A stretch of DNA of 64,000 nucleotides from Vitrella brassicaformis CCMP3155 (GCA_001179505.1 CDMY01000698.1:186001-250000), one strand, 5' to 3'. Counted from the first letter of the stretch, positions 20,045-54,117 are shown. The notes: a model not told the origin generated them from the letters alone. Program-made: numbers and translations.

Positions 20045-20076
<32 letters not shown>

Positions 20077-20979
20077 TCTTCTTAGACATTGACGAGTGTC
20101 GTGAGAACAATGGCGGCTGCGAGCACATCTGCATCAACGAGCCGGGCAGCTACCAGGTGAGTGACTGTGAACAACACGCACTCACCTCTACAGAGCGTCG
20201 CATGAACGTGTCCGTGATATGTCATGTTCCCTCCCTCTGTGTGTTTATTCAGTGTTCGTGTCCCGAAGGCTACCGGCTAGCGGAAGACGGCAAGAGCTGC
20301 GAAGACATTGACGAGTGTGCGGTTAACAACGGCGGCTGCAGCCAGGTGTGCAAGAACAAGAAGGGCACATACGAGTGCCTCTGCGACCCGGGATTCCTGC
20401 TGCAAAAAGACGGACGCACCTGCAAAGGCAAACCTTCTTTCCCCCACCCGCCGCTCCCACACGCACACGTGCATCCCTCTCCTCTGTGTGATGATGATTA
20501 TGATTATGATGATGACGATCAGATGTGGAGTGCAAATCTCCGCCACGGATTGCCCACGCCGCGAGTGTCTGCGAGAGCGCTCGGTCGGGGTCCCAGCCCA
20601 AGTGTGCGGTCAAGTGCGAGAGGGGCTTCCAGCTGGCATACAACGACCTCAAGTGCGACACCAAGGGACGTTTCACAGGCGGCGCTGAATGCGAGGGTGT
20701 GCTCAGGCACAGAGGGAGGGATGGATGGACGCACTTGTACGTGTGCGAGGTTTCGGTTTGTTCTGTTGTGTGGGGTGTGGTGTGCAGACATTGACGAGTG
20801 CAAGGAGGAGAACGGTGGGTGCAACCAGAGGTGCGTCAACAAGGAGGGCTCGTTCGAGTGCGGGTGCTTCGAGGGGTACCTGCTTGACAGGCAGAACAGG
20901 AGGACCTGCCAAGGTGAGCATGACACACAGACAGGCGTGACCTAGAGACAGGGACGCGCAGACAACCATCTCTCTCTGC

Positions 20980-28500: not shown

Positions 28501-31500
28501 CCATGGCAGAGCCCTGCTTGCCGGCCGGTCCCGCAGCGCCTGTGGTGCCGTTGATGCCGCTGCTGTAGCTGCCCATCATAAGTCGGCTGCCCCCGCTGCC
28601 GGCACTGTCGGTGCTGCATGCGCTCCGTGTGCTGCCCGTGCCTGTGCTGGGCACAGAACCCGAGTAGGTGTATGGGGCACGGTCGCGTGTCGACGATGAC
28701 GACGGGTTAGACGAAGGCTGCCAGTAGAGGGACGGCTGCTGCGGCACGGGGGTCCCTGTGTCACTCGGGGTGGACGGTGGGTCTCGGCGGGTCTTGGGCG
28801 AGGGAGAATTCTCGCCGTCGGCGCGTGAGGGGAGGGTGGTGCACTCGGATGCGTTGTGAGTGGCGGCAGCTGTTGGCGAGGGGAGGTGGTCGCAGCTGCA
28901 GCTGGCCGTGGTGCTGCCGTGAAGCGTGGAGCCAGCCGTGCTCAGGACGCTGTCGCTCCTGCCCACGGCCATCCGCAGAGGCAGGTGAGATGGGTGAGTC
29001 GAAGACGCCTTCTCGTCACCCTTGTCCTCTCTTGCCGGCGGCTCGTCATGCTGTGACACCGACGTGGTGATGTGAGTGGGCGCCTCCTCCACTGGTGCCG
29101 CCTTGGCCACCTCAATCACGCCGTTTGCCTTGACCTCCTCCCCCTCCCCCTCTCCAATCATGGGGACAACGGTCTCCATCTTGCCGACATCCATGTCCTT
29201 CTGCTCCTTGTCCTTCTGGTGGTCCCGGTTCTTCTTCTTGCCGCCCTTGGGGTGGTCCTTGGCTCTCTGCTTGGGGGCGGGGACCTCACGCGGCGGGGTC
29301 GGCTCAGCCTCAGCCTGCACCCCGACAGCCGCCTGTTCAGGGACGTCAGTCACCTGCTCAGCCATGCCGCTCTCCTGCGGCCTCTCGATCTCAGACACCT
29401 CCTCAGCAGCCTTCTCACACTCATCCACTGACGCACCACCCGTCCCCGAGTCGTCTGGGACAGGGGCAGTGGCCTCAGTGCTCGGTGGTGGGACGCTCTC
29501 AGCAGCACGGGCGGTGGCATTGGCGTCGTCAACTCCCGTGTCGGTGTCGGTGGGCGTTGGCCGCTCCTCGGTGGTGGGCTCACTCTGGCCGGCGGCCGGC
29601 TCCGCCCTCTGCCGACCACTTCTCTTCTTCCGTGGCGTCTTGCCCTTGTCATTGGCAGCCTTGTCGTCGCCAACCACTGGCTGTGCGGCCGCCGGGTGGT
29701 CATCCTCATTCCCCTCCCTGCCGTTGCTCGCCGACGAGCTGGCAGGGGCAGCCGCAGATGCAGAGGCAGAGGCAGAGGCAGATCCGGATGCAGTCGACTG
29801 CGCGCGGTTCTTCTTCTGTCTGCGTTCCTTGTCTCGTTTGCTCTTGGCCAGCGATGCGCCGTCGGCAGCCGCGCTGGAGGCAGTGGTGCTGCCCTGTGAG
29901 GTGGAGGAGGGTGCGGATGGTGCGGGTGTGAGTCCCGTCTTGCGTGCGAGGAGCTGGTTTTGACGGCGGATGTGTCGGGGTGGCGGGGGCTGGGAGGGAG
30001 GGGGGTGGTCGCTGGAACGACGGATCAGATCTAGACACGCGTTCACTGTCAATATACACGCACCTGCATAACGACAAGAAAGAAAGAAAGGGACGCATCC
30101 ACCCACCCACCCACCCACAGTCCCGTTGTGTGCTGTGTTGTGTGTGGTTCTCTGACTGACGCACCAGGGATGATCTCCATGGCATCGGTGAGATGTGACG
30201 AGTGTGCGGTGGAGGACGCTCTCGGCGTGTCGCTCCCCGTCAGACTCTCCTCCCCCTCCCCCGTCCCAACAGACGCCCCCTCAACCCTCTCCCTCTCTCC
30301 CGCCCCACTAGCAGCGCTGCTAGACGACCGCTCCTCATGCGGCTCGATAGCGATACCCCTCTTGCGCACAATGGCAAAGAAAAACGAAACCTCATCCGGG
30401 AAGGGCGTGTTGGGGCCGAAGGTGCCGTACGCCCCCGGCTCCTGGCTGATGCGCACAACTACAGCTGACTCAGGCATGGACTGGGCCGAGTTGTCGGCCG
30501 ACGCGGTGCCCACTCCTCCGTTGACTAGCGTGGGAGGGGGGTGGCGACTGACGGTTGCTGTGGTGGGCGACGAAGGGCGAGACGACAGCGATGCTGCTGA
30601 GGGGTCGGGGTCCGACGGCTGAGAGGATGCGGGGAAGGGCATCGACAACGGCAGGTCAGCGTCGTCACTACTCGCATCCTTGTCTCCCTGGCCGCTCCCC
30701 GACGGCTTGTCGTCATGACCGTCGTCCGTGTTGCTGTCGCTCCACCTCCTCGCCAGCCTGGGGTGGTCCTCCCGCCCCTCCCCCTCCCCCTGCTGCTCCT
30801 GATCTTCTCTCCCCACCGAGGGGGGCAGGCGAAACGACAAGGACGGCGAGCTGGTCGACGCATGCTCGTGGTCCTCGCCCTCCTCAGTGGTGGAGGGCGA
30901 TGGGCTGGGTGGCCTGGCCATCATCTGCCGCATATGGCGGGACTTCTTGGCCATATCCCGTCGGTACTCCTCCAGCTGGATGTCCGCCTGGGTCTGCCTG
31001 GCGTCCGACAGGAAGGATGCGACTGGCCTGAAGTCTCTGAAGTCATGCTGGTGGGAGTGAGGCAGCGACGGGGAGGGCGAAGACGACGACGTTGACAGAG
31101 AGGGCGATGTCGGGGTCGTCCGACGAGCCTGCAGAAGCCAAGGACAAAGGCACAGCCCAGCCCGTGCTGTCATCAATCTTTCCACGGTTTGCTGTCTGTG
31201 CTTTTGCTGGGCGCGTAGCGTACCTCGACTGTGACGATGCAGTTTCCTTTGGTGATAAGGTCAGCATCGATTCTGCTCTGCCGTGAGCTGCCGCCCTCGG
31301 ATGCGGCGGCCGATGCTGATGCTGATGCTGAGGCCGATGTGCTGCTGTGAGTGGGTGTGACGCACGCTGCCCCAGACGATGGGCCTGCTGACGCAGACTC
31401 AACGGGCATCATCAAACACTGACACACACAACACGACACAAGACAAACAGACACACGGTTTTGTTGTCGGCTACACCAGTGAGTGATCGTGCTATGCATC

Positions 31501-38092: not shown

Positions 38093-41000
38093 CTACGTGC
38101 CCGCCCCGCCCTTGTCTCCCCCCCCAGCACCACTGTCGTGTCTGTGTGTGGATGTGCGTGCGCCGGTGTGGAACTTGGGTGCCTGCGGGACGGTGAGTGG
38201 CTTGTCAGATCGCCTGACGGGCGGGGGCGGGTGGAACACCGGTGCCGGCTTGGCCTTGGGCACCGCCTCGGCACGCAACGCCGCCCTCTCCTCGCGAAGA
38301 CGCTGCGCCTCCTCTGACTGCATACACACACACACATACACACACGTGTGGATGAGTGCGGGCGGGTGCCTGCCTGCCTGCCGCCAGCTGACTGACAGAC
38401 ATACCTGTTTCTTCTTGCGCTCAGCTTCGGCGGCGGCTTCCTTTGCCGCACGCCGGGCCTCCATCTCGCGCCACTTGGCGTTGCGACTGCACGGCAGCAG
38501 ACACATGTGTGTATGAGAGGGAGGATTCACACACACAGGTGGATGCGATGCTGCGGTGTCTGTCACCTTCCTTCACCTGTCGACTGCGAGGTTGAATGGG
38601 AGTGTCTCGGTGAGGTGGATGGATCGGGACTTCGACAGCCCCTTATCGCCGCCGGCACCACCACCACCACCACCGCCAACGCCGTGACTGTTGGCAGCGG
38701 GGGGAGGCTGCGGCCACACACATACACAAGAAAGTCGACACACACACACACAGACACACGTGTTTATTGCCTTCGTCCTGACAGCTGGCTGACCTTGGGT
38801 ATGTATGGTCTGGCTTTGAACGATGCCTGCTCGCGCTTCTTGCGCTCCTGAGCATCGACCTGACGACAGTCGAAAGTCCACACGCACGTAAGGAAACACG
38901 CGAACGAATGCGACCAGTGAGTGGTAAGGCAAGCAGCACGGACTGACCTGCTTCTGGAACTCTCGTCTGGCATACTCGTGTCGGTGCTCGCTGGACAGGT
39001 CGAAGGGCTTCGGGGCCGTCAGGGGGCGACGATCCACAGACGCCGACCGCAGGGAACTGCCGCCCTTCTTCTGCACATACACACACATCATCCGTCCATC
39101 CACACACGCGACCTTATGTGGGTGTGGGCGTGTGTGTGAGTGAGAGGTGGTAAGTGGTGGGTGGGGTGGTAGATACATACCAGTATGTTGGTGGGCACGG
39201 GGTTGGCCTTGACTTTGCGTCGCTCCGCGTGCTCCTGCTCCTCGTGGGCCACGCGAACCTCAAACTCATGACGGTAATGCTAAACACACACACCGCACAC
39301 ACATAAACACATTTCACACATGTGTGTGTAGTGGTGTGGGTGCGGGTGTGGGTGTGTTTGCCCTGCCTGTCCTCGCTGCTCTGTGGCGAGCTGGAAGGCT
39401 CTCGGGACGGTCGGCTTCCCCACACCAACACCCGCCCCCGATGCTACGCTCACATGCTCTCTATCAGATCCGTGGTCAACCTCACTCTGATGCACACACG
39501 ACACACAAAGACAGAACTCAGTCAGCACAGCGGTGAATATGACGACAAAAGGCCTGTCTCTGTCTGTGTGTGTGTCATGTGGATGTACGTACCTGTGCGA
39601 TAGGTTTGGCGCGTCCCTTGGTGGCGAGTGGGGGGGACTGGGGGTTCGTCAGATCACGGCTGCCCACCTTGGGCTCAAACAACTGCGCACATAGATAGCA
39701 CAATGACACGTGTGTGTCCATGTGTGTGTGTGTGTGGTGAACTCTTGCCATTCACCGACTGACCGGTCGTTCGAGCATTTTCTTGTTGAGGGGTCTGGCC
39801 TTGAAGTGCGCCGCCAACTCCTCCCCCTCCTGACCCCCAGCCCCACCATCCCCACCACCGCCCCCAACACCCTCCTTGCTATCACCACCGACCCCCTCAT
39901 CCATACGGCTACCCTGAACACACCACACACAACACAACACAATACAATACAACAATACCATATAACAAGCTCATCCACACACACACACACGAAAGAATCG
40001 CCTCGTGTGTGTGTGTGTGTGTTGTTGGTTGCCTCCTTTTTGTGTTTGAATGCTGCGAGTGGTGGTGTGACGGGGTCGGTCAGCTGTGGCGGGGGCACGT
40101 GGGGCACCCCCAGCGGCCGGTCTGCGCGCAGCACCTTGGGGTTGAGCGGGCGGGCGCGGAATGGCGGCATCTTGGCCATCTCATCGGCCTCCTGCTCCTC
40201 ACGGGATACAAACCTGACCAACAAATGCATTGCATTCACACACAGAGAGAGAGGAAAGACTTATCCATCTATCGACCTATCTGTGTGTGCGTGTTTGTGT
40301 GTGGTGGGTGCGTGCGTAGGTACCTACCTGGGAGGTTTGGGCGGCAGCTGTTCTGTGTGCAGGTTGAATGGCTGAGGGCACGTCAGCTTGCCCCCGCCGG
40401 CTACGCCGCCGCCCTTCCCCCTCTCACCCCTGGCCCCCTCTCCCTTGGCCTCCTCCCCACGGAGCGACCTCTCAAACTCACGCAACGTGTCAGCCAACGG
40501 CGTGTGCCTCCCGTCAGCTCCTACACCGCCCCCCACCCCCTCTCCCCCGCCCCCCGCCCCCTCCATCTCCCTGACCCGCATCTCCGTGGCAAACCGGAAG
40601 GGCACGGCGGGCGTGGGCTTGCCCGTGTAGTGGGTGGCCGCCTTGCGGTGGCGGTCGGCGTGAGAGGGGCTGGGCTGGTAGGGCCCCAGACGCACGTCGG
40701 TCGACAGGGCGAACTCCTGGGGCATGGTCAGCGGCTTGACGGACCGCTTCATGGCCTGTCCCCCCACACCCGCCAGCACACGCGGGAGGGACTTCTCGTT
40801 GAGCTGCCGCAGTCGGGCGGCCTCGGTGCGCCCCTTGTGGATCTCGCGCTGCTCCTGCAACTCACGCGACTCCTCAGAGGTGCCGCGGAGCCGGGCCGAT
40901 GTGGCGAATCGGGGGCTGTGGGGGTTGGTGAGCTTCCTGTGGTGGGGGAGGGCAGCCGGGAGGGACGCCGTGTCGTGTTTGTCATGGTCAGCATGGTCCG

Positions 41001-41643
41001 TCTTGGCATCCCCCGTCCCCCCCTCAGCATCGTGATCGTCCAGGTCTTGTGCGGCAGCTGCGCGGGTCTCCCAGGCCTCTGAGCCGACGAGGTAGAGGGG
41101 GAGGGGCTCCTCCTGCCGGAGGGCTTTGAGGACCGCCCCGTCCGCCGCCTCGACCGTGAGCCCGTCCTCCATCGACCGCTTGCTGCCAGACTGGTCCTGG
41201 TGGTAGTCCTTCTGCTCCTTCTTCTCCTCTCCTGTGGTGGTCACCTCCTCCTCCTCCTCCTCCTCCTCGGCCGTCGCTGGTGCTGATGCAGGTGAGGGTG
41301 CAGCCTCCCCAGCCTGGTGAGCCGCCTCCACGCCTTGGCCAGCCGATTGCGAGGCCTCTTCGCCGCTCTGGCGGGCCAGATCTGCCTCAGGTGCATCGCC
41401 GGGCGGGGCGGATGGCTGCTTGACGTCTGCTGCCGGTGGAGCGGGCTGCTCATGGTCTGCCGGTGGAGTGGCGTCCGCAGGGCTCTCCTGGACGGGGCAT
41501 TTCGGCTCTACTGATGGCAGCGGTGCGTCGTCGTCACCGTTGGCATGGTCTTCCTCAGCTGTTGTGTTGCTGGGTCTGTCCTCGCCATCAGTGCGCACCT
41601 TCGCCGATGGCTGCGGTGCCTCCTCCTCGGTATTCTTCTCCAT
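38093..41643 (-). CDS. TPX2: TPX2-family microtubule/spindle assembly protein
   Basis: Acidic N-terminus followed by repeated TPX2 motifs: LTMPQEFALSTDVR, PAVPFRFATEMR, LTCPQPFNLHTEQ, PFRARPLNPKVL, FKARPLNKKML, VPRAFQLATEQR, LTAPKPFDLSSEHR, FKARP, ETLPFNLAVDR, and C-terminal RAEAVPKAKPAP...KPLTVPQAPKFHT. Confidence 0.88.
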
Positions 41644-41724: not shown

Positions 41725-44700
41725 ATGATGACGCTGGTTGCGTTTCGGGCCGTCAACTACGTGGATGAGCACAGCCGCTCTCTGGCCCTTCAGAACCGTG
41801 CGCTGACCATCTCGTCCAAACGGCCCTCCGCTTCCCTGGCCGAGTCGTCCGGTGTCAAGACCTACTACCGACAGTGCGACGCCCTCATCAAAACCACACA
41901 AGAGAAGCCTCTCGACGCCTGCACCCTCTTCAGCCTCGGCTCAGGTCGGCTAGCTGGCAAACAACGGCCGGCTACTGCAATGGGTGTGGCCACCGTGTGT
42001 GTGCGGTCCTTCCTTCCATTCTGAGCAGGCAAAACCACCACTACGGATGGTTTCCTCTTTGGCGGTGGTGTTCTGGCGTGTGCGAAGGCCACCCATGGCG
42101 ATGCCCAGAAGCCGGCCCCTCCTGCGAGCACCTGCAGCTTCGACGAGGCGGGCGAACCCCTGCTGACCATCGACGAAGCTGGTACAGTAGGATCATCATG
42201 GTGGCACGCGCGAAGGTGCAGGGGATTGTATGTGTGCGTGTATGTGGTGTCCGTCTGCCTTTTGCAATGGATGTGGAAGTGCCGCTGTTGAGGTGGGATG
42301 ATTCGCCTGCCATGGCGGCAGATGACCTCCGTGAAGGCATCTATGCCGCCAAGTGTGTGGACGACACCTATCACGGCAGAAGCAGCGGCCCGTCGGGCAG
42401 CTCAGAGATCGCACTCGCGCTCGAGGGGGTGGACATGTCCAAAGAATACACGATCCAGGTGTGTTTGCAGTGGGTGGAAGTGCCGCACTCACACCGGTGG
42501 GTGCATGGGCCGCGTCGTGTACCGCGTTGTGCCCTTCAGAGTCTGAAGGACGAGGCATCGACGGCTGATAAGACCATCTATGGCGACGAAAGCCTGCCTG
42601 AAGGTCATCAATCAATCACCCACACGAGCACCAAGACGCCCCACACTTCTAGCACGATTTTGCCGGTCCGTGCGTCAATCAGGTGAGTATGTGGATGCGG
42701 GGTGGATTGAGCTGCCCGAGCCCGTCTTCCCCTCCTTCACCACCCCCGACATGCCGGCCGCCACCCACCATGACCACGATCAGCTCCTGGGCGGCCCTAC
42801 ACACATGCTGCAGCTGGTGAGCGCGATGTACCAGTCGGTGAGTCGGGACATCGCATTGGGCGAGGGGCCGGCGGAGTGTACGGTGGACGACCTGAATCTC
42901 AAGGACCTGTGTGCCAAGGTGCGGAGGGGAGGGGGGCGCATGTGCGTGGATGAGAGAAGCAGAGCGTTGGTTGGTCTCCTTGTGGCTGTATTGTGTGGTA
43001 TGCAGGCTGTGGGTGTGGGCAAGACGGTGGTTGACGTCCTGCTGCATGAGCAGCTCCGATGTGGGGCATCGTCGTCAGAGGACGTGTCTCGCTCAGATGA
43101 CCTCAGCACTGCTGCAGAGGAATGGGGCGCCCTCTTTGACGCAGAAGGTCAGCTGTCATCATCGCGTGTGAGGGATGGATGGATGGATAGATAGATGTCT
43201 CATTCCTTCATATCATCAGATGACATCTCTGCGTTTGAGATGCCCTGTGAGGAGAAGGTGGCGGCCACATCATTCCTGTGCGAGACTGTCTTCACAGCCA
43301 CTGAGGTGCGGTATCCTCCTCCCCTCCCTGGTGCGCTTATGCGTGGGTGTTCTCTCTTTTCTGTGTGTCCAGGAGCTGAATGAGCTATGGGCGCCGCGCG
43401 ACATCGGTATCGCAGCCATGGGTTTCGACGATGGTGCGCCCCCACCACACTACACCACCCCCGAGCGTCAGAACCCTGTGCTGCTTGTGTGTGTACGCCA
43501 TGCAGTATTTCGCCAGCAGATGGCTGTCGCCAGCTGTGTCGGTCCAGAGGAGCGCAAGCACCGCGGGGAGAACGAAAAGGAGCTCAACTTCATGTCGGCA
43601 TTCAGGTCAGCCAGCACGTATGGCACCCGCACACACAAGCTTCATTCCTGGTTTGGTGCATTGCTGCAGGCCCCGCTTCCTCGAGTCCTTGACCGACTTG
43701 GCCAGTGTGGCATTCCTCGTCTCAGGTACACACACATGAGTACACAGCCACCAGCAACGAGCGAGCAGCCGGTAGATATGTATTGTGTGGCCGCCCTCCC
43801 TCCCTCCTTCCCTCCCTCCTTCATGTGTTCAGAGCGTCGTCGCTTGGATTTCGACCTGCCGGTGCCCGACAGCCTCAAGCCGATGCCCTCACGATTCGCT
43901 GACCCCATCGAACGCATGAAAAAGGGCGAGAGGGGGTGAACAGCTAAACAAGAGAGAGGCACACACCCAAACACGGACACGTATACTACATTGGGGGTGC
44001 TTCCTTGGTGCAGTTCGTTGCGTGAGAAGGCGCTTCCCCTGTGGTCGTTTGCCGATATCAAGGACTACGTCTACACCTCACTGCTCAAGACACACTCGTC
44101 AATACTCAAGGTGGGTGTGGGTGGGCCAGCCGACCCAGGCGTGCGTCTCTTCGTCTATGGCTGTCTGGTTTGTGTGCCATGCAGGTGCCATCTCTCAGCC
44201 GCCCGTTGCATCTCGAGTTTCTCCGCCTCACCGCGCCCCAAACACCCACTTCTGCGTATGCAGCCATACACACACATGACACGTGCACTGACTGACATGA
44301 GTCCACACAAGGTGTCCTTGCGTGTCAGTGCCGCTGCTGACCCTCCAGCTGACGTGTTGGACGAGGCTATTCCCTCGGTGGATGGTAAGACAATGCCCAA
44401 ACACTCACTGTAGCGAGCCGTCTACGCGTATCTCCTGGCTGTCCATTTGTGTGCTTCAGGATGCGTGTGGGACGAGAGCATCGAGGTCGCCCGACCGCCC
44501 TGCGCATTCAGTGTCTTCCAGCCACAGGCGCCCAACCAGCCCTCTCGCAAGCGCAAGTCCGAGGAGCCCCCGCCGGACGTCACCGAGGCATCCGCCGAGG
44601 CAGCCCCGCCGCCCATCCAATTGCTACCGGAGACTCACATGCAGGTGCAGGCGCAGGAGAATCCTTCCACCTCGACCCTTCCTCCAAACGAGTTGGCGAC

Positions 44701-47700
44701 CGACGTGGCCCCTGTTCGCATCCACAACGCCCCCTCACGTGCCGGCGGGCTGGATGAGGTATGACGTCGTCAGAAAGGCACACAAGAGCAAGGGAGGGAA
44801 GGGTAGCATCTTTTGCTGCTGCTGCTGTGTCGTTGGTCTGTGTGTTTGCCGGGGTGACAGTTCATGGAGTTGAGGGGTCGCAAGTCGGTGAGTGCGGTTC
44901 AGAGGCAGGACGGAGACGAGGAGTCGCCACACTCGGTGGCCGAGAGAATCGCACGCGGTGAGCAAATGGACAGACAGAACCACACAGACAGACCTACCGG
45001 ACGGAGGGAATCACGGCACCCTTTCTTTGTGACGTGTCTATCTGTGCAGGTCTGCGTCGAGGTCAGGTTCACTGGTGTTCGGATGGTGACGACTTTTGGG
45101 CGTTGGAGGGCCTCGTCGACTCGTCCATCAAACAGCTGTGGCGACACACCATGGAGGCCACACAAGGTGGCCGGGCCCATCATCGATGCGCGAGACATCA
45201 CATCATTCACACCACACCCACCACAACATGCGTCCGTCCACTGACATCTGTTGTGTGCAGAGGAGTACCTCGGCCTCCCGCCGCCCGATCTGTCGGGTGT
45301 TGACTCCCTCCTCAGCAAGTGCGAAAAGGCCATACGCGAACTGCACGAGGTAAGGTACCTGGGCGGCTGGCATCCAACCAGCGAGACACCCATCTCATGA
45401 CGGTGTCTCCCTCCCACTCCCTGCCGGGATGGATTGCCTGCAGGTGTGTGTGGGCGACGGTGGATCTGCGTCAGAGGAGACCAAGAAGCAGCTGGTGTTG
45501 TGCAGCGAGGTCTATCGCACTCTCACGGCGCTGTGGACGCTCGTTGCCATTCACGACAAACTCACGGACGCGGGCGTGTCAGAGGTCAGCCAGCCAGCCA
45601 GCCAGCATATACCTCTTCTGCAGATGGATTCGTGTTTGTCCAGGCTGTGGCGTTTGCGTCAGTGGTGTACTTGGACGGTGCCTATCACGAGATCCTCTCT
45701 GCCAACGTGTTGGTGATGGACGCACTTCGCGCCCTCTTCAGCTACCGCGAGCTCTCCTTCCCACCCAAACCCGTCACAGAACCTGAACACCTCTCCGAAC
45801 GCGTCAGTGTGCCCACCACACACACCAACGAAACGACAAATGGGATTCGGTGGTGGTGTTTTGTTGTCAGAATGATCGCGACAATGCGCTGGTGTGCAGT
45901 GGGCTGCCCTATGTGCCGTCGCCGACCGAGGCCTATCTCGCCAAGACCGACTCGCCCAAACTGCAGGGGGTGGCGAAGCTCTGCGAGAAATACCCACGGG
46001 TGCTCGTCGTATTCTCCTCTGAAAAGGTCGCCACACGTGGATTATTGGCAGCATAGCATGTCTGTCTCTGTCTGTGTGTGTGGTGGGTGCCACTGGGTGG
46101 TGTGCCGTTGCGTGCAGGTGATGGATGTGGTGGTGTCTGTGATGAAGCGTCGGTTCGACAGCAAGATGGACGTGATGCGGCCCACACTCCCCACACCCAG
46201 GAGAATCGCAATGCTCACGACCTCATCCAAAATCGCCATCCACGAGGCGTGTTTCTTCAAGACTCTCCCGGCGGCCTCGGGGAGCCGTGCAGCACTGGAA
46301 CCTGCCTTCGAGATACCACCCTCCTTCGTAAGCCACCCAACTCACCCAATGCGACAGAGAGAGAGAGACAAGAACGTCTTTGTTTGTGTGTGTGTGTGCT
46401 GGCAGGTCGTGGTGAGCTACCAGTCGCTCAACATCATCTCACATGGTCGACCAGAGAGCACTCACTCGACGCACATGATATGCCGTCACTCACCCTCATA
46501 GACGGGTTTGCCGATGGATGAATGTAGGGGACCTTCTGACGGACGCCATTCACATCTTCCTGTCGGTGCCACCGCCCACAGAGACACAACAACAGCATGA
46601 TGAGCCCAAACAGACGGCGGACGGCAAGGCCGCACAGCCGCCGTAAGCGACCAGACTACACAAACACAAAATTTAAAGGGGGCCTGCCTTGTCACCCGGT
46701 CCGTGTCGTCAGGCGTACGACCATCTTTGCCAGCATGCAGCTCATCCAGTGGCAAGGTCAGTCAGTCCACACACGCAGAGCCTCGTGCACGTAAGGAGTG
46801 CGTTAACGAAGGAATGCCTCTGTGTGTGTGTGTGTGTAGACTTCCTGCTGCGGTTGCGTGTGAAGCATGCGATAGAGTGTGAGGAGAGGGAGCAGCTCGC
46901 CTTCGCCGAGGCGGACCTCGTGCTCGGTAGGCCCACCCAGACACACACATAACACCTCCATCCATCCATCCACCCGCTGCTCATCCATCCATCAGATCAC
47001 GAGACGTGTGTGTTGTTTGTGGACATCGAGCGGTCGACCGACGAGAGCATACAGTCGGCACTCAGACAACTCGTCGACCTGCAGCTGTCCTTCCAACAGG
47101 TATGTGGGGGACTTAGTGAGGGAGTGAGTGGGTTGGCCAGCGAGACACAAGGGACACACCCTCCCTCCCTCTGCCCCATGTCTTGTGTGCCTGTGTGTGC
47201 ATGTCATGGATGCAGGTGGTGGTGGTCTTGTTCGGTAATTGGGAGCTGGCCAAATCCAGCCACCAGGACCACTTCCTCGCAACCATCTCACGACTACCAC
47301 GGTCGGTGACCATCTCATACACACACACACTGTCTCTGTCTGGTGTTGCGGACATAAATGTGTTCATCTCTGCAGGCCGTGCGCGATTCGATTTGCGAAG
47401 ACACTGGACCAGGCGGCCGACTGTGTCAGCTGGTAACCAAAGAAATGATCCGATGTGGCCACCCGCCCAACAACCAAAACATGGAGATGTCTGCAAATGG
47501 GTGGGTGGCTGCAGTGAGCTTCGTCGCGTGGAGAGTATCTGGTCTAAGCGTGGGGAGGGGGACATCTGGCGGCAGCTGCGCACATTTACACAGCGCAAAG
47601 AGACCAACCTCGAAAACGCCATGGCCATCTTACCAGGTACTTACACCGGCTGCGAGCCAACAAAGCTTCCCCTCAAACACCAAACCAACTCTTTGTGGTG

Positions 47701-48974
47701 TGGTGTGGTGTGCTGTAATGTGGTCTGCTGTGGTGTGGTGTGTATCATCAGGCCACAATTGTTTCAACGCGTTGTTGGCACTGAACGCCATGTCTGCCGA
47801 GCGCATGCCGCTGGGGGAGATCATGTCCTACGACCGTGACAGCCTCGCACGGCTCTTCCCGTGGCTCGATGAATTCGCTGTCGACGCATGCCTCGTACAG
47901 ACATCACATCATCATAGCCCACGCCCCCACATACTCTCCCTAAGGCCTCTGTTCTCTGGTGGTGTGCTGCAGGCGACTTTCACGAAGAGCATGGGTCTGG
48001 AGGTGGTGCCCTCGACAGCTATCCAGGACGACCTGCCAGCAGCAGCTGCAGCTGCAGCAACGGCAGTGGCAACAGACGACATTGAGATCGAGGGTGTGGG
48101 AGGGTTTGCCGAGGGCCTCCCCATGCACGGTCGCCCCCTGACGTCGATGCCGCACGAGTACATGCCCGGACCTGTACCTGGCCAGCCTCACCCCGCCAAC
48201 CACCCCCACGCCCCTGCTGCATCCGAGTCTGAGCCCTACAACGAGGCCTCCTACCTTTTCCCACCTCGACAGATGCCTCCCACACACACGCGAGAGCCCC
48301 CCACATCTGAACCAATGGGTGGGCGGCCGATGATACAATCTCGCCCACTTGCTGTGAGTGTCTCGTTCGTTCAGCGTTTTCCGGTCTGCTTGGGACGTCG
48401 GTCGACTTCCCATCCCCCAGGCCGATACCCCCGATGCAGCACGACGAGTACAGCCAACCAGCCGAACAGCGTGGCAACCCCTTCCACGCCACCAACCCAT
48501 TCGACGGCGAATTGCCGCCCGGCTGGTATGAGATCCCGGAGGAGCCTGGGACCTACGTGAACTGGCCAGTTTCGTCTGCTCTCGTCGACCACTGGCCCCA
48601 CAAGCAGCAGCAGCAGCGCAGCAGGGCTGCAAGTGTGGCCAGCCTGGGGGGGCCTGGCGCGTCCAGCATGACGATTGTTGACAAGCAGCAGCGGCAGGCG
48701 CCGTTCTGGGAGGCGCCGGGGCGGTCCTTCATGTCATCCATGCAGCCCGCTCGCCCTCAGCTGGATGCACACATGCCCTCCCTTTACCCGTCGGACTCAT
48801 CGCAGTACTACCCCAATCACAATCTTCCCCCGCAGCCCCCGGCCACCGACCCTCTGCCACACACCTCACCCGCACACGCAAACCCACACATCAACCCACG
48901 GTGGGTGGATGGACCAGAGATAAATGCACCTCTCTCTCTCTCTGTCAACACACGTCTCTCTCTCTCTCTCTCTA

Positions 48975-49005
<31 letters not shown>

Positions 49006-50064
49006 GGTCGTCAGGTTCCAGCAGGCTGACGTGTACAGCCCCCCTTCCAGGCGTGTGAGGCCATCGTACCACTACCAGCCGTACCAGTCATACCAGTACC
49101 AGCAGCAGCGGCAGCAGCAGCCCCCTCACTCATCGCGCGAGTACAGTGTGATGCATAACATGGCTGCTGACGGCAGTGAGGACGGGCACGTGTGCGACAA
49201 GATGCAGCGGTATGCATCGACAGTGGTGGGGGGCGGCGGGGGACGGCACACATACGACACACAGCCACCCCAATACGGCAGCGGTGAGACAGACATGTCG
49301 ATTGGCGTGGGTGACCCCTTCAGACGATTGCCCTTTTGTGTTGTCCTTGTTTCCTTGTTTTGTGTGTGTTTCAGGTGGGGGGGACTTCGTGTACGGTGGC
49401 CAATTTGCTGAGTATGAGAATCCCGTCGACCACTGGCCCCACCACCACCCCCACCATCAGCAGCAGCAGCAGTACCAGCAGCAGTACCAGCAGCGGCATG
49501 CCCACGAAGGTGCGGAGAAACCCACTGCAACCAATCATAAGTGCCTCGCTGCTGATGATGTATGTGTCCTCTGTGTCCTTGGCAGCCCGCACGCCGTTCA
49601 AGCGAGGCCGCACACCAGCCCGCAACATCCGCATCATGCAAGTCGACGGTAGACCAACCCCCCCCACCCCCACCCCCCAACACCAAAGGACCCATGGCGC
49701 TGCACCTTCAGCCCTTGTCTGTCCGTCCATTCACACACAGGTATGGATGCATATTTGCGTGAGCACAAGCCCGCCATGAGCAGCCACGGCCGCATGTCCA
49801 CGTCTGATGCACACCCCCAGCCATCCCCCGGCCGCCCAGCTGACGTTGACTTCAGCGACTTCTCCTACCAGGGCAACTCGACCAAACCGGCCAGCAAGAC
49901 GCCAGCCACGGCCGGGCGGCCACGGGCGTTCGTGCGCTTCTCCAAGACACCCGGAAAGTGAGAGAAGACGTGCAGGTCCCCGTATGCTCGATTCATTGAT
50001 GGTGTGTGTGTGTGTGTGTGTGGTTAGGCGGCAGACGAAGTTGTACTTGCAGCCGGTGCGGTGA
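41725..50064 (+). CDS. SHOC1: Large multi-exon protein; candidate SHOC1/Zip2-like meiotic crossover factor with a degenerate XPF/ERCC4-(HhH)2 domain; the 5' part may be a separate gene
   Basis: Spliced TTIFASMQLIQWQ|DFLLRLRVKHAIECEEREQLAFAEADLVL|DHETCVLFVDIE...LRQLVDLQLSFQQ|VVVVLF, then ENAMAILP|GHNCFNALLALNAM...LGEIMSYDRDSLARLFPWL, and a terminal VRFSKTPGK|RQTKLYL. These resemble, from memory, the SHOC1 XPF-like core and extreme C-terminal motif. About 30 GT-AG exons from ATG 41725 to TGA 50064. Confidence 0.6.
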
Positions 50065-51145
50065 ACCCTCTCGCATCACTCATGGCGTTTCAGGGCGTGG
50101 CGTGGCGTGGTGTGCTTCGATGAGGAACCCGATGTCCGTGTCCTTTCATGTCAGTGCACATCCAGGTGCACCCATCATGACCATCTGTGACCGACTCGCA
50201 AGTCATCGACCGACGAAACGATGAGTGAGTGAGTGGAATACGTGTGTCTGTGTGTATGTGTGTGCCTGTCTCTTGGTATTGCGCGTGTCCTTGCCCACTC
50301 GTCACTCTAGTACCACATGCCACAGACATCAGAAAAAGAACCACGCACATAGACACTGGGGGACGGCAAGAGCGAAGTGCAGTCAGTCAGTCAGTCGGCC
50401 GGCCGGCGCACACGCACAATACAACGGCACACCAGGCATGTGACCACGGCCGGCAGTGAGTCGATGCCTCGCCTCTCTGAGAATCAGCTTGCAACCAATA
50501 CAGAGAGAAGCTCATGCACCAGCCACACCACGCAGCCACCACTCCACGGTCACCGAGCAGCATGAATCAAGAGGGAGCATAGAATTGAACACACATGTCA
50601 GAAGCGAGTACCAATGCAGAGATGCAGCCACCGATAGATAAACCGCCATAAGCCAGTCGACACGCACACACACACACACACACATGCACACGGAGGGGCC
50701 GGTCGGCCGCATACACGCAGGCAGACATGGGTAGGGTATCGATGCGATTAATAAAGGAGTGAGACATGCACTGCACGGCACAGGCAGTGGCTGGCTCAGT
50801 GGGCCGTCCGTTCGCTCGGCAGTCGGTAGCGAGCGGCGGCAAAAAGGCCGCCATCTGCCGGCGACACACACGGCACTCATGGCATGGCACGGCATTACAC
50901 GGCACGGCACGGACGCACAGACGGATGAATGGACGAGAGAGACCACACGTACGCACGAGAGAAATGTGATATGACCGACCGACAAACCGACACGGCTCCC
51001 CCTCTCCCTCCCTCCCTCCCTCGGTCTACACTACACTGCACGCATCACTGCACAAGCTCAGGCAGGCCCAATAAAACACACACATAGCACAACGCAATGC
51101 ATTCAATACAACACAACACAACACAACACAGCTTACACGTCCACA
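50065..51145. repeat. Microsatellite-rich spacer between convergent genes
   Basis: (CA)n, (CAGT)n, (CACGG)n, (CAACA)n and (CCCT)n tracts; no exon chain. Confidence 0.6.
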
Positions 51146-54117
51146 TTACACGTCCTGCACTGTGGTGCTGGGGGTGACGAGGACCGGCACTGTGGTGCTG
51201 GGGGGGGTGATGGTGCTGGGGGTGACACTGCCGCAGTAGGCCATCGTGGTGGTGGCGGTGGTCTCAGTGGTCTCAGCTGTGGTCGTCACGGTGTGGTCCT
51301 CCCCATCCTTGAGCTGCTTGAAGGCCTGACCACGGCCGTAGTCCTTGCCGCCGGTGACCAGGTGGTCGGGGAGCGGCTTGCCCACTAGGAACCAGAAGGC
51401 CACCGTCGCCACCACATAGCCGATGAAGGTCAGACCGTACTCGGGCATCCCGAAGGGAACAGCTATGTAGCCCAGACACAAGGCCAACATCGCACCGAAG
51501 CACGCATAAGGCAGCTGAGATACACAGCACACATACAGAGAGGGGTCGTGTGGGCCATGATGTGTGTGGCTCGCGTCGCGAGTGCATACCTGCGTCTTGA
51601 CATGGTCGATGAGGTTGCACCGAGTGGCCACCGACGACAGCACAGTCGTATCCGATATGGGGGAGCAGTGGTCACCGAAGATCGCGCCGTCCAACACTAC
51701 CAACACGCACGACAGACAGACAACACCCACACTCCTGGTCTGAAATGAAGCAGGTGATGTGTCTGCGAACCGACCTGCCGATGCGGTGAGGAATATGAGT
51801 TTGACCCCCAGTGGCGACAGGCCGAACCGCCCGCCCTCCGCGCGCTCACTCAGACGGTACGCAATCGGCACCGTCACGGGCAGCAAGATGCCCATCGTGC
51901 CCCAACTCGTACCTACACAGCACACGCACACACACACACGTCAGGGACGGGATGAACGGCGTCTTCGCTCAGCTCACTCACCGGTGGCGAGGGCACAGAC
52001 AGCGGCGAGGATGAAGGTAACGAGTGGAACGATGCGCGCGTCGACGTTGCCCATCAGCCCTGAGATCCAGTCGCCTGTGCCCATGCCGTCGCACACTTTT
52101 TTGATGCCCCACGCAGACATCAGCACGAAACAAGACGACAGCATAAACTGCAGACACACAGACAGACAGACATCCACCAACACAACACAAGAGACAACGT
52201 CATGGTGCTGACTGACTGACCTTGACGCCGTTGAAAAAGGCTATCACGCAATCCTCAACCTGAACCAACACACACACACCACACACACGGACAGACGCAC
52301 TGATGTGCCCTTCCATCCTCTCTCTGTCCATCCATCCTTTGTGCTGACTGACCTTCAAGATGCCCTGGTAGATGGGCATGAGCGACGCAATCAGCGTGCC
52401 ACACAGCGACACCACGAACAGCACATAGGAAGAATCGGCCGCGCCAAAGCTCAGTCGCCACGCGGCCTCATTAAAGATGTGAGGACCCCCAGGGATCTCG
52501 TCGCCCTCCTCCAGGATCATCGCTTGGCCGTTGAGGAACATGCCGAACAGGGTGCCCACGACCACGGCAACGAGCGGCACGACGCTGTTGTACCACCGCA
52601 ACGGTGCGCCGAGAGGCGGCTTGTTGGTCCGCCGACGGAACTCCTCGTCAGGAAGCGTCTCGCGGAGCCTCTGTGGCAGGCAGGCAGGAAGGCATCACAC
52701 CAACAACTGCATATTTGACGATCGGCTAATCCCTGCCTCTGTGCCCTCCCCACCGACTCACCTCGATCTCGTCTTCGTCAGCGTTGGCCTGCTGGTCCCA
52801 CAGCCGGCCGGTGGTGAGGGCACGCCTCTCGGCCGCCAGCATTGGGCCCCAGTCGCGGCGCATCAGCGTGCCCAACACGATCACGAAGAGTGCGGCGTAG
52901 CAGTAGAAGCGGTAGGGCAGACAGTCGATGAACATGGCATAGCCATCCTCACCCAGATTCAACTGCAAGCAAAAGATACAGACAGACATAGGATAGGCAG
53001 ATGGGAACGAAGGCACGGGAAAGCAACAAACAGAAAGTAAGTGCCTCTGGTCTAGAGAGGTCCGTGTGAGAGCATGTGGTTTCGATCCCCCTAACCTCCT
53101 TCGAGACGTCTTGCAGCAGGCCGACCTCGAAAGAAATCCACGTCGAAATGACCGCAACACCAGCAACTGCACCGCGCACGCACGCACCGACACGCACGCA
53201 CGCACCATCACCGACCCCCAGGAGGCTTCTCCAGGTGTGTCAGGGCTTCTTACTGGGTGCAGCGGTAGAGTCCACGAGGTAGGCGAGCTTCTCGCGTGAC
53301 ACGACCATGCGGTCGCTGAGCGGCCGGATGGAGTTGCCGACCACGACTGAGTTGCCGTAGTCGTCGAAGAAGAAGACGATTCCCATGATGAATGTGGCGA
53401 TGCGGGTGGTGTAGGGGGTGCGGGCGAACCGCATGATCTGCTGCACCAGGCCGTCCATCCCCCCAGACCTCTGCATGATGGCAATCATCCCACCGATGCA
53501 CATCGAGAAACCCAGGATACGCGCATTGAACGTGTCCCACAGGACACTGACACACACACACACACCGCCTCAGGCTCCTGTGCGTGTCTGTGTCATTGAT
53601 GGTGTGTACTTGAAGTAGTAGTGTTCAAACACGTCCCAGGGCGGGAAGGGCTGCGCCGACTGCACCCACAGGCCTCCGAAGACGACACCGAATGTCAGTC
53701 CCCAGATGACGTCCCGGAACACCGATGCGTAGGCAATGGCGATGACGGGCGGGAGAACAGACCACCAGCCGCCGTACCACCACGGCTTGTCGTTCCCCTC
53801 CCCCTTCTGCTGCTGCACGTCGCCGCAGCAGGGCTCTGAGATGATCGCCAGCACGGCGCAGAAAGCCGCAATAATGCCCAAGAAAATACACCACTTCTGC
53901 ACACGTCAATACGCGACAGCCAAGGAATCGAGGGACGTCCGTGAGAGATCCGTGTGTGTGTGTGTGTGTGTCTGTGTGTTATGCGGTGTGGTCGGTGGCT
54001 GACCTTCCATTTGGCTCCGAAGAGGCTGTATAGGCCTGCTGTGGTTCCTGCTGGTATCCCCTTGAGGGAAGTGGCGAAGTCGGCGCAGTGGATAGGCTCC
54101 AGATCATCGGCCTCCAT
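51146..54117 (-). CDS. nhaC: Na+/H+ antiporter NhaC-family membrane transporter; ~13 exons
   Basis: Family motifs [61 protein letters not shown] and [19 protein letters not shown]...DHVKTQ|LPYA; many hydrophobic segments. Confidence 0.92.

What the first reader, a model, noticed from the sequence alone, without database searches (positions are those of the whole stretch)
46690..50064. Candidate SHOC1/Zip2 (ZMM crossover pathway) gene in an alveolate-like genome
Three ordered segments match my recollection of SHOC1: the XPF-like core (IFAS..L....FL..L...H.I...ER...DL.LD..TC.LF.D.E...L..L.LSF..V.VVL), the (HhH)2 region (LP...CFN.L.A...M.....L..I......L..LFP) and an extreme C-terminal F.KTPGK.QTKL motif. 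SHOC1/Zip2 is fast-evolving and often missed by annotation. A real ortholog would indicate class I crossover machinery and active meiosis in this lineage.
Basis: partly seen in the sequence, partly recalled or inferred. Interest (0 to 1): 0.8.

Follow-up and report, generated by a model that had tools for sequence, protein, structure and literature searches.

The report
Candidate SHOC1/Zip2 crossover gene, Vitrella
The flagged stretch is the back half of a real, spliced, already-predicted but unnamed 1759-residue gene of the alga Vitrella brassicaformis. It carries a degenerate XPF-type "dead nuclease" domain and is most likely, though not provably here, the missing SHOC1/Zip2 meiotic crossover protein of this relative of malaria parasites.

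Summary
The gene is larger than flagged: 38 exons at window 41728-50064, all introns GT-AG. It equals the public Vitrella brassicaformis protein CEM30577.1/A0A0G4GKL4 (1759 aa, "uncharacterized"). Contigs of an RNA-like run skip one intron and stop at four other exon edges.

- Residues ~1016-1140 model as an ERCC4/ERCC1-type fold. The best structural matches are ERCC1, FANCM, FAAP24, Hef, XPF, EME1 and Zip2 (Z 7.3-9.5), but the model is low-confidence.
- The only PDB sequence hits are yeast Zip2 (E 0.23, not significant).
- The nearest named language-model clusters for the whole protein include two SHOC1 (PF17825) clusters.
- The nuclease motif is degenerate (AD..x14..ERS, no catalytic lysine).
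- A 524-residue P/Q-rich tail follows the core; human SHOC1 also has a disordered C-terminal tail.

Against it: there is no significant sequence E-value, no Pfam hit and no detectable homologue. The (HhH)2 domain rests only on a pattern. No partner or meiotic expression was tested.

Verdict: XPF/ERCC1-superfamily pseudonuclease ~0.9; SHOC1/Zip2 orthologue ~0.6. This is a new member of a known kind, of moderate interest. Published work already credits Vitrella with Msh4, Msh5 and Mer3. The scan also noted this stretch in an overlapping window (s1-205798).

The parts
41728..50064 (+). Whole coding region of the gene. It has 38 exons and 37 GT-AG introns of 56-116 nt, and encodes 1759 aa. It equals CEM30577.1 / UniProt A0A0G4GKL4 of Vitrella brassicaformis CCMP3155.
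   Evidence: The exact protein-to-genome mapping and re-translation equal P0001.
41728..46642 (+). N-terminal region, residues 1-1015 (24 exons). No recognisable domain was found. Residues ~752-823 are predicted as three long helices, followed by an alpha/beta stretch (~860-990) that looks helicase-C-like by eye only.
   Evidence: Pfam finds nothing. PDB phmmer finds nothing meaningful. The AF2 model of 745-1012 has pLDDT 44.7 and matches only generic helical bundles. The RNA-like contig joins 45582|45642.
46713..47432 (+). ERCC4/ERCC1-type (XPF-like) pseudonuclease core, residues ~1016-1140, in five exons: 46713-46756, 46840-46926, 46996-47099, 47216-47301 and 47376-47432.
   Evidence: VIA-align gives ERCC1 Z 9.5, FANCM 9.1, FAAP24 8.5-8.7, Hef 7.9-8.1, ApXPF 7.2-8.1, EME1 7.4 and Zip2 7.3 over model residues ~31-150. 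An Atlas ERCC4 representative aligns at TM 0.68 by target. PDB phmmer hits only Zip2, E 0.23.
46908..47045 (+). Vestige of the XPF active-site motif GDXnERKX3D: A-D (ADLVLD, 46908-46925), 14 residues, then I-E-R-S-T-D-E (47025-47045). The first Asp, the Glu and the Arg are kept. The catalytic Lys is Ser, and the last Asp is out of register.
   Evidence: Read directly from the sequence. The register comes from the phmmer alignment to Zip2 and from the strand/helix order of the model. Equivalence to the canonical motif is inferred from the published motif (PMC5962103, PMC6411835).
47515..47990 (+). Linker helices and putative degenerate (HhH)2 domain, residues ~1142-1235. The first hairpin is ILPGHNCFNALLAL and the second is LFPWLDEFAVDACLATF. 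Exons: 47515-47636, 47752-47894 and the start of 47973-48318.
   Evidence: This is a pattern by eye. The AF2 model has six helices here at low pLDDT. Foldseek alignments to FANCM and Zip2 span 184-209 columns. Pfam and PDB sequence searches find nothing. An RNA-like contig covers 47749-47895.
47991..50064 (+). Low-complexity, probably disordered C-terminal tail, residues 1236-1759 (P 14%, A 9%, Q 9%, S 9%, G 7%, H 6%).
   Evidence: Composition comes and Pfam finds nothing. RNA-like contigs lie at 48374-48551 and 49014-49104. The only relative of this part among 1.84 billion representatives is the protein itself.
49586..50064 (+). Last three exons. They hold four of the protein's five full CDK-consensus sites ([ST]Px[KR] at residues 1657, 1664, 1704, 1745) and the terminal FVRFSKTPGKRQTKLYLQPVR.
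   Evidence: Regex count; sequence. Function is not tested.

Best explanation
The stretch is the C-terminal 744 residues of a 1759-residue nuclear gene of Vitrella brassicaformis. It most likely encodes the SHOC1/Zip2 orthologue, the XPF-like subunit of the meiotic ZZS complex (Zip2-Zip4-Spo16; SHOC1-TEX11-SPO16).

Shown here:
- The gene is real, transcribed and spliced.
- Residues ~1016-1140 are predicted to adopt the ERCC4/ERCC1 fold.
- The nuclease motif has no catalytic lysine.
- A long low-complexity tail follows.

Inferred from what is published for Zip2 and SHOC1:
- The dead nuclease domain and a degenerate (HhH)2 domain pair with a small ERCC1-like partner (Spo16/PTD type).
- Together they bind branched recombination intermediates without cutting them.
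- The long N-terminal part recruits a Zip4/TEX11-type scaffold.
- This stabilises class I crossover-designated intermediates alongside the Msh4-Msh5 and Mer3 that Vitrella is reported to keep.
For: Gene reality:
- The exact 38-exon model has all introns GT-AG.
- Spliced contigs lie on it.

Fold:
- In the wide search (one chain per 40%-identity PDB cluster, 48,161 chains), the three matches with Z>=8 are ERCC1, FANCM and FAAP24, and 10 of the best 22 are XPF/ERCC1-family chains.
- A second look at Foldseek's top 1000 PDB chains gave the same picture.
- The Atlas gives an ERCC4 representative at TM 0.68 by target, and a PF17825 representative among the ten listed rows.
- Foldseek ranks FANCM, Zip2 and Hef near the top.

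Subfamily:
- The only PDB sequences reaching E<=10 are two Zip2 entries (E 0.23 and 0.46), aligned at the homologous strands of the XPF-like domain.
- Whole-protein language-model neighbours at ranks 2 and 3 are PF17825 clusters, one of them named 'protein shortage in chiasmata 1 ortholog'. The tool reports that 9 of the 10 best hits with a family share one family or clan.
- Domain-only neighbours are all XPF/ERCC1-type pseudonucleases: EME1-MUS81_C, SCRE/SPO16, PTD and FAAP24.

Architecture: a long N-terminus, an ERCC4-(HhH)2 core and a disordered C-tail, as described for human SHOC1 (PMC5962103).

Motif: part of the XPF motif is kept (D, E, R) and the lysine is lost. FANCM likewise lacks the lysine, Zip2 keeps only the first Asp, and SHOC1/Zip2 are reported to lack a working active site (PMC5962103, PMC6411835, PMC5859969).

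Context:
- Vitrella is reported to keep Msh4, Msh5 and Mer3 (PMC7522995).
- Zip2 evolves very fast, at 23-26% identity among related yeasts (PMC5859969). Failure of sequence searches is therefore expected.
Against: - No line of evidence reaches conventional significance. Zip2 E is 0.23, language-model scores are 0.82-0.89 (the tool calls anything below 0.9 a lead only), and Foldseek E is 3e-3 or worse.
- The AF2 model was made without an alignment and has mean pLDDT 48.
- Pfam PF17825, PF02732 and the HhH families do not match, even at E 10.
- The N-terminal 1010 residues alone give no language-model neighbour.
- The (HhH)2 domain is not confirmed.
- The fold search cannot separate SHOC1/Zip2 from ERCC1, FANCM or EME1. 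Zip2 (Z 7.3) ranks below ERCC1 and FANCM.
- No Spo16/PTD or Zip4 partner was looked for, and no meiosis-specific expression was shown.
- No orthologue from Chromera or any other alveolate was found. The ERCC4 core itself was never run through the exhaustive HMMER search.
Confidence: 0.6

Rival explanations
1. It is the EME1/Mms4-type non-catalytic partner of MUS81, the class II crossover and replication-fork resolvase subunit, enlarged by lineage-specific N- and C-terminal extensions.
For: The top domain-level language-model neighbour is a cluster with PF21292 EME1-MUS81_C (0.89). Another neighbour carries ERCC4+EME1-MUS81_C. EME1 chains match the model at Z 6.7-7.4. EME1/Mms4 also evolves fast and is often 'not found' in protist inventories (MMS4 was not found in diatoms, PMC4647503).
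Against: - Pfam PF21292 does not match.
- No EME1 or MUS81 sequence reaches E 10 in the PDB search, while Zip2 does.
- Whole-protein neighbours are SHOC1, not EME1.
- EME1/Mms4 proteins end with the HhH2 domain and are about 550-700 aa (my knowledge). This protein is 1759 aa with a 524-aa tail.
- The retained D...ER vestige fits a descendant of an XPF-type catalytic subunit better than an ERCC1/EME1-type one.
Confidence: 0.15
2. It is a lineage-specific XPF/ERCC1-superfamily pseudonuclease that is not orthologous to any named subfamily. It would be a structure-specific DNA-binding scaffold used in repair or replication in vegetative cells, not specifically in meiosis.
For: No homologue was detected anywhere, and it forms a singleton cluster. 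Fold matches do not discriminate subfamilies. Spliced contigs are present in a run that may simply be from a standard culture.
Against: Two independent subfamily-specific leads point to Zip2/SHOC1. The architecture parallels SHOC1 (PMC5962103). The rest of the ZMM core is reported in this species (PMC7522995), which leaves a SHOC1-shaped gap.
Confidence: 0.15
3. It is a very divergent orthologue of a canonical family member: XPF/Rad1, FANCM or ERCC1.
For: ERCC1 and FANCM give the highest structural Z (9.1-9.5). FANCM chains have the best Foldseek E-values among XPF-family chains.
Against: - Canonical XPF, ERCC1 (Rad10) and the FANCM helicase are well conserved and recognised by Pfam. None of PF02732, PF03834 or the DEAD/Helicase_C families matches anywhere in 1759 residues.
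- There is no ERK lysine.
- ERCC1 and FAAP24 are small proteins.
- PDB phmmer of residues 1-1010 finds no helicase.
Confidence: 0.05
4. The ERCC4-like fold is an artefact of a low-confidence single-sequence model, and the protein has no relation to the XPF family.
For: Mean pLDDT is 48. STAS and other alpha/beta folds score Z 7-8 as well. All sequence statistics are non-significant.
Against: Four different methods converge on the same small superfamily: phmmer, Foldseek 3Di, the VIA-align structure search and language-model features. That superfamily makes up a tiny fraction of each library.
Confidence: 0.05

Closest known systems
SHOC1 (human C9orf84/MZIP2, Arabidopsis SHOC1; Pfam PF17825)
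   Same: It is a large protein. An ERCC4-like core with a non-canonical active-site motif is followed by a putative (HhH)2 domain and then a disordered C-terminal tail (PMC5962103). Whole-protein language-model neighbours are PF17825 clusters, and an Atlas fold row is PF17825.
   Different: The PF17825 HMM does not match. Human SHOC1 keeps ERK (GEX22ERKX3E), whereas Vitrella has ERS. The tail is longer (524 aa) and P/Q/H-rich. The N-terminus shows no detectable similarity.
Saccharomyces cerevisiae Zip2 XPF-like domain (PDB 6BZF/6BZG, with Spo16)
   Same: It is the only solved protein with any sequence match. That match runs from the GD-equivalent strand to the next central strand, with E-Q..F.E.D....H.TCV shared. 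It has the highest %id among structural matches (15-16%, Z 7.3). It keeps the first Asp of the motif and lacks a working active site (PMC6411835).
   Different: E 0.23 is not significant. Zip2 is 704 aa and ends with its HhH domain, which is reduced. Zip2 has lost E and R of ERK, which Vitrella keeps.
FANCM C-terminal ERCC4-(HhH)2 pseudonuclease with FAAP24 (PDB 4BXO, 9HJO)
   Same: It is among the best structural matches (Z 8.9-9.1; among XPF-family chains the best Foldseek E-values, about 3e-3). It is also a nuclease-dead XPF-type domain lacking the lysine, used as a DNA-structure sensor.
   Different: FANCM has a conserved N-terminal DEAH helicase. None is detectable here.
ERCC1 central domain / XPF-ERCC1 (PDB 2A1I, 6SXA, 9QED)
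   Same: It gives the top structural Z (9.4-9.5) over ~93-106 residues. The local string DLVLD.ETCVLF resembles, from my memory of ERCC1, DYVLGQSTCALF.
   Different: ERCC1 is about 300 aa and is recognised by Pfam Rad10, which does not match here. The retained D..ER vestige is a feature of XPF-type subunits, not ERCC1-type ones.
EME1/Mms4 (PDB 2ZIU, 9F9x)
   Same: It is a nuclease-dead ERCC4-like domain plus HhH2 and evolves fast. The domain-level language-model top hit carries PF21292. Structural Z is 6.7-7.4.
   Different: There is no Pfam or PDB sequence match. Size and C-terminal tail are unlike EME1, and whole-protein neighbours are SHOC1.

Membership tests
XPF/ERCC1 superfamily (ERCC4-type fold) | Central alpha/beta ERCC4/ERCC1-type domain | tested here: met
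   VIA-align wide search: ERCC1 Z 9.5, FANCM 9.1, FAAP24 8.5, Hef 7.9, XPF-ERCC1 7.7, MUS81-EME1 7.3 and Zip2 7.3, each over ~90-106 residues. The pdb_via second look agrees. An Atlas ERCC4 representative gives TM 0.68 by target. Caveat: the model has pLDDT 48 and used no alignment.
XPF/ERCC1 superfamily (ERCC4-type fold) | Tandem helix-hairpin-helix (HhH)2 domain right after the core | tested here: inconclusive
   Two hairpin-like patterns (LPGHNCFNALLAL and FPWLDEFAVDA) and six low-confidence helices are present. Foldseek alignments to FANCM and Zip2 span both domains. There is no Pfam HhH hit and no PDB sequence hit for residues 1140-1245.
XPF/ERCC1 superfamily (ERCC4-type fold) | Match to Pfam ERCC4 (PF02732) or Rad10 (PF03834) | tested here: not met
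   No Pfam family matches at E<=10 on the whole protein or on the domain pieces.
SHOC1/Zip2 | XPF-type core whose GDXnERKX3D motif is degenerate (nuclease-dead) | tested here: met
   The sequence reads AD-x14-ERS-T-DE: the lysine is replaced by Ser and the last Asp is out of register. The register is supported by the Zip2 alignment. Equivalence to the motif is inferred.
SHOC1/Zip2 | Specific sequence relationship to known SHOC1/Zip2, closer than to other XPF members | tested here: inconclusive
   Zip2 is the only PDB sequence hit, but E is 0.23. Whole-protein language-model neighbours are PF17825/SHOC1 at 0.82-0.83. The PF17825 HMM gives no hit. No reciprocal search was possible.
SHOC1/Zip2 | Heterodimer with an ERCC1-like partner (Spo16/PTD/SPO16) | not testable with these tools
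   The rest of the Vitrella proteome could not be searched, and no multimer prediction tool was available.
SHOC1/Zip2 | N-terminal region binds Zip4/TEX11 | not testable with these tools
   Residues 1-1015 have no recognisable domain or neighbour.
SHOC1/Zip2 | Meiosis-specific expression and requirement for class I crossovers | not testable with these tools
   Only low-depth spliced contigs from one RNA-like run of unknown life stage were seen.
   The motif is present in Vitrella (49741-50064).
EME1/Mms4 | Match to PF21292 (EME1-MUS81_C), with ERCC4-like+HhH2 at the very C-terminus | tested here: not met
   There is no Pfam hit. 524 residues follow the putative HhH2. Only a domain-level language-model lead at 0.89 points this way.
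FANCM | Conserved N-terminal DEAD/DEAH SF2 helicase | tested here: not met
   No helicase family appears in Pfam on the whole protein or on 1-400 and 400-760. There is no helicase in the PDB phmmer of 1-1010.
XPF/Rad1 (catalytic) | Intact GDXnERKX3D with catalytic Lys | tested here: not met
   The sequence has ERS instead of ERK, and the G of GD is Ala.

The most novel reading that the evidence does not exclude
This is the first SHOC1/Zip2 orthologue recognised in Alveolata. It would show that the ZZS crossover complex was present in the myzozoan ancestor. It would then be either hidden by divergence or lost in apicomplexan parasites and dinoflagellates, where Zip2 is listed as absent. A more speculative extension: its terminal 105 residues carry four full CDK-consensus sites and a basic Q-T-K-L end, and could form a cell-cycle-regulated docking module that couples the DNA-junction sensor to downstream crossover factors.
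Probability: 0.5. Interest if true: 0.6.

Novelty: new member of a known kind. Interest (0 to 1): 0.5.

Why it matters
Meiotic gene inventories of alveolates and other SAR lineages routinely list Zip2/SHOC1 as 'not found'. This is the case for Symbiodiniaceae (PMC7299967) and diatoms (PMC4647503). From such absences, authors infer loss of the class I (interfering) crossover pathway.

If this Vitrella protein is SHOC1, part of that absence is a detection artefact of a very fast-evolving gene. The protein would then be a stepping-stone sequence for finding orthologues in Chromera, colpodellids, coccidia and Plasmodium. It would also complete the ZMM set (Msh4, Msh5 and Mer3 are already reported) in the closest free-living relative of apicomplexan parasites.

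It does not by itself change the view that Vitrella is sexual. That is already proposed from cytology and the core meiotic toolkit (PMC7522995).

Tried and rejected
1. Pfam on unspliced ORF pieces found nothing apart from one weak chance hit. So did Pfam on the whole protein and eight sub-ranges.
2. The word-index homologue search was run three times: on the tail ORF, on residues 740-1235 and on 1012-1236. It returned only the protein itself. This is limited by the 5-mer index and the length window.
It found only P0001. The ERCC4 core was therefore never searched exhaustively.
4. AF2 of 745-1012 was run to test a helicase-like domain suggested by eye (..KYPRVLVVFSSEKV.. and ..FVVVSYQSL..). The model has pLDDT 44.7 and only generic helical-bundle matches with Z<=7.5, so it gives no conclusion.
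5. Language-model neighbours of residues 1-1010 gave no usable hit.
6. PDB phmmer of the HhH2 region gave nothing.
7. Findings look-ups for ZMM or ERCC4 elsewhere in this genome returned nothing beyond this same stretch.
8. The Zip2 alignment and the strand order place ERK at IERS (47025-47036).
9. I rejected a WW domain in ..LPPGWYEIPEEPGTYVNW.., because the spacing between the tryptophans is too short.
10. I rejected a canonical PIP box in QTKLYLQP, because there are no aromatics at positions 7-8.
11. I did not type the spliced sequence into any tool. All protein work used P0001 by reference.

Full report
WHAT IS THERE

The window is eukaryotic, with GC about 59% and short GT-AG introns that often hold TG/CT microsatellites.

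I built a splice model of 46713-50064 by hand from GT/AG sites and reading-frame continuity. It has 14 exons and no stop, and ends at TGA 50062-50064.

The exhaustive HMMER search with the stop-free ORF 47358-48557 returned one protein, P0001, 1759 aa, E 1.8e-88. Residues 1016-1759 of P0001 are identical to my model.

P0001 is CEM30577.1 / UniProt A0A0G4GKL4, listed as an 'unnamed protein product' and 'Uncharacterized protein' of Vitrella brassicaformis CCMP3155. It is a singleton at 90% identity. It maps exactly onto window 41728-50064 as 38 exons. All 37 introns are GT-AG and 56-116 nt long, and re-translation equals P0001.

The finding's coordinates therefore cover only the last 744 residues. 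Position 46690 itself lies in intron 24.

TRANSCRIPTION

One public run that the tool guesses to be RNA (X1) holds short, low-depth contigs that behave like cDNA. One joins 45505-45582 to 45642-45788, skipping the annotated 59-nt intron within the 2-nt ambiguity. Others begin or end at annotated exon edges inside longer contigs: 47213-47300, 47749-47895, 48374-48551 and 49014-49104. DNA-type runs (X3, X4) cover the locus continuously. The life stage of the RNA sample is unknown.

WHAT THE PROTEIN IS

Sequence methods are almost silent.
- Pfam finds nothing at E<=10 on the whole protein or any piece.
- Three word-index searches find only the protein itself.
- The PDB sequence search is the exception. 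With residues 740-1240 the single hit is yeast Zip2 (6BZF_B, E 1.4). With residues 1010-1240 the only two hits are the two Zip2 entries (E 0.23 and 0.46).
- The alignment pairs REQLAFAEADLVLDHETCV...QQVVVVL with Zip2 IEQSYFGECDFIINHSTCV...QRVIIIV. That segment runs from the strand bearing the 'GD' aspartate to the next central strand of the XPF-like domain.
- These E-values are not significant. However, Zip2 is one of about 178,000 distinct sequences, and it is the family named in advance.

Structure

AlphaFold2 without an alignment gave a poor model of residues 1005-1245: mean pLDDT 48, with 56-71 over model residues 50-135. The structure-only search against 48,161 PDB representatives nevertheless put ERCC1 central domain (Z 9.5), FANCM (9.1) and FAAP24 (8.5) as the only matches at Z>=8. 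Hef (7.9), XPF-ERCC1 (7.7), MUS81-EME1 (7.3), Zip2 (7.3), A. pernix XPF (7.2) and the FAAP24 ERCC4 domain (7.0) followed. STAS domains were interleaved among them.

The second look at Foldseek's list agrees. ERCC1 scored 9.5 and 9.4, FANCM 9.1 and 8.9, FAAP24 8.7, Hef 8.1, XPF 8.1, EME1 7.4 and Zip2 7.3. Zip2 had the highest identity, 15-16%. Foldseek itself ranks FANCM, Zip2 and Hef among its first 25, at E 3e-3 to 4e-2. The Atlas shape search lists an ERCC4 representative (TM 0.68 by target, 103 residues, rmsd 3.1) and a PF17825 (SHOC1) representative among ten rows.

I take the ERCC4/ERCC1-type fold as supported. The fold alone cannot pick a subfamily.

Language-model features
- For the domain alone, the neighbours are all pseudonuclease clusters of this superfamily: EME1-MUS81_C, SCRE (= SPO16), PARTING DANCERS, ERCC4 and FAAP24. 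Scores are 0.86-0.89.
- For the whole protein, the named neighbours at ranks 2 and 3 are PF17825 clusters, one of them 'protein shortage in chiasmata 1 ortholog', at 0.82-0.83. The tool reports that 9 of the 10 best hits with a family share one family or clan.
- The N-terminal 1010 residues alone give nothing.
- By the tool's own calibration these are leads, not proof.

ANATOMY AND LIKELY MECHANISM

I read the core against the published XPF motif GDXnERKX3D (PMC5962103), using the Zip2 alignment and the strand/helix order of the model. The Vitrella protein has A-D (ADLVLD, 46908-46925), then 14 residues, then I-E-R-S-T-D-E (47025-47045). The first Asp, the Glu and the Arg survive. The catalytic Lys is Ser, and the last Asp is displaced.

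For comparison, FANCM lacks the same lysine and is inactive. Human SHOC1 has GEX22ERKX3E and no activity in vitro. Zip2 keeps only the first Asp (PMC5962103, PMC6411835).

After a helical linker come two hairpin-like patterns, ILPGHNCFNALLAL and LFPWLDEFAVDACLATF. They fit a degenerate (HhH)2 domain, but no tool confirmed it.

Then follow 524 residues of P/Q/A/S/G/H-rich sequence. The last 105 of these hold four of the protein's five full CDK-consensus sites. Human SHOC1 is likewise described as having a naturally disordered tail after its (HhH)2 domain (PMC5962103).

The most likely mechanism is inferred by analogy, not shown. It is a nuclease-dead XPF-type subunit that pairs with a small ERCC1-like partner and binds D-loops and Holliday junctions. 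It would protect crossover-designated intermediates, while the N-terminal part binds a Zip4/TEX11 scaffold (PMC5859969, PMC6411835).

RIVALS

EME1/Mms4 is the serious rival, at 0.15. It is also a fast-evolving dead ERCC4+HhH2 protein, and the top domain-level language-model cluster carries its Pfam family. Against it:
- There is no Pfam or PDB sequence support.
- The whole-protein neighbours are SHOC1.
- The protein's size and its C-terminal tail do not fit EME1.
- The D..ER vestige is typical of XPF-type subunits.

A lineage-specific XPF-family scaffold with a non-meiotic role (0.15) cannot be excluded without orthologues or stage-specific expression. Divergent XPF, FANCM or ERCC1 proper (0.05) fails on the missing lysine and on the absence of any helicase, ERCC4 or Rad10 Pfam match. 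A modelling artefact (0.05) is unlikely, because four different methods converge on one small superfamily.

CONTEXT AND NOVELTY

Vitrella is reported to keep the full core meiotic set, including Mer3, Msh4 and Msh5, and a sexual process has been proposed for it (PMC7522995, citing Fussy et al. 2017). A SHOC1 orthologue is therefore expected rather than surprising. It adds little to the case for meiosis or the class I pathway.

What would be new is the identification itself. Zip2 is listed as not found in Symbiodiniaceae (PMC7299967) and diatoms (PMC4647503). I found no paper in the held library that pairs SHOC1 or Zip2 with an apicomplexan or chromerid orthologue. Zip2 shares only 23-26% identity even among related yeasts (PMC5859969), which explains the blank searches.

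I classify this as a new member of a known kind, with interest 0.5.

LIMITS
- No alignment could be built, so both AF2 models are weak.
- The Vitrella proteome could not be searched for partners or for the other XPF-family members.
- The claimed C-terminal SHOC1 motif could not be compared with any SHOC1 sequence.
- The same stretch was also noted by the scan in an overlapping window (s1-205798). That is not independent evidence.

Noticed in passing
window 40324-41643 (- strand): An ORF with a TPX2_importin domain (PF12214, E 3.2e-8) lies head-to-head with the SHOC1-like gene. Its ORF start at 41643 is only about 85 nt from the ATG at 41728, so the two genes may share a bidirectional promoter. 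TPX2 is a spindle protein.
   Followed up: partly
window 51146-51937 (- strand), probably extending to ~53500: An exon of a Na+/H+ antiporter (PF03553, E 3.4e-14) is convergent with the 3' end of the SHOC1-like gene. RNA-like contigs of X1 and X2 cover 50032-50400 at much higher depth than the SHOC1-like exons. They probably belong to the 3' UTR of this neighbour.
   Followed up: partly
window 49586-50064 (residues 1655-1759 of P0001): Four of the protein's five full CDK-consensus sites ([ST]Px[KR]: TPFK, TPAR, TPAT.., TPGK) cluster in the last 105 residues. They are next to a basic terminal KRQTKLYLQPVR.
   Followed up: partly
window 48901-49014 (intron 33): This intron carries a compound (CT)n(GT)n microsatellite. 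Every public DNA contig laid here breaks at 48928/49014, so short-read assemblies do not span it.
   Followed up: no
window 19923-20945 (+ strand): An ORF with several calcium-binding EGF / cEGF / FXa_inhibition domains (E down to 1.5e-31). It looks like an extracellular EGF-repeat protein.
   Followed up: no
window 26807-30118 (- strand): A very long stop-free ORF (1103 aa) in a 64-67% GC stretch has no Pfam match. It may be a large single exon or just a GC-rich open frame.
   Followed up: no
window 45444-46642 (residues ~745-1012): By eye this region resembles the second RecA-like lobe of an SF2 helicase-like domain (..KLCEKYPRVLVVFSSEKV.., ..FVVVSYQSLN..), as found before the nuclease domain in XPF, Hef and FANCM. 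The single-sequence model was too poor to test this.
   Followed up: partly
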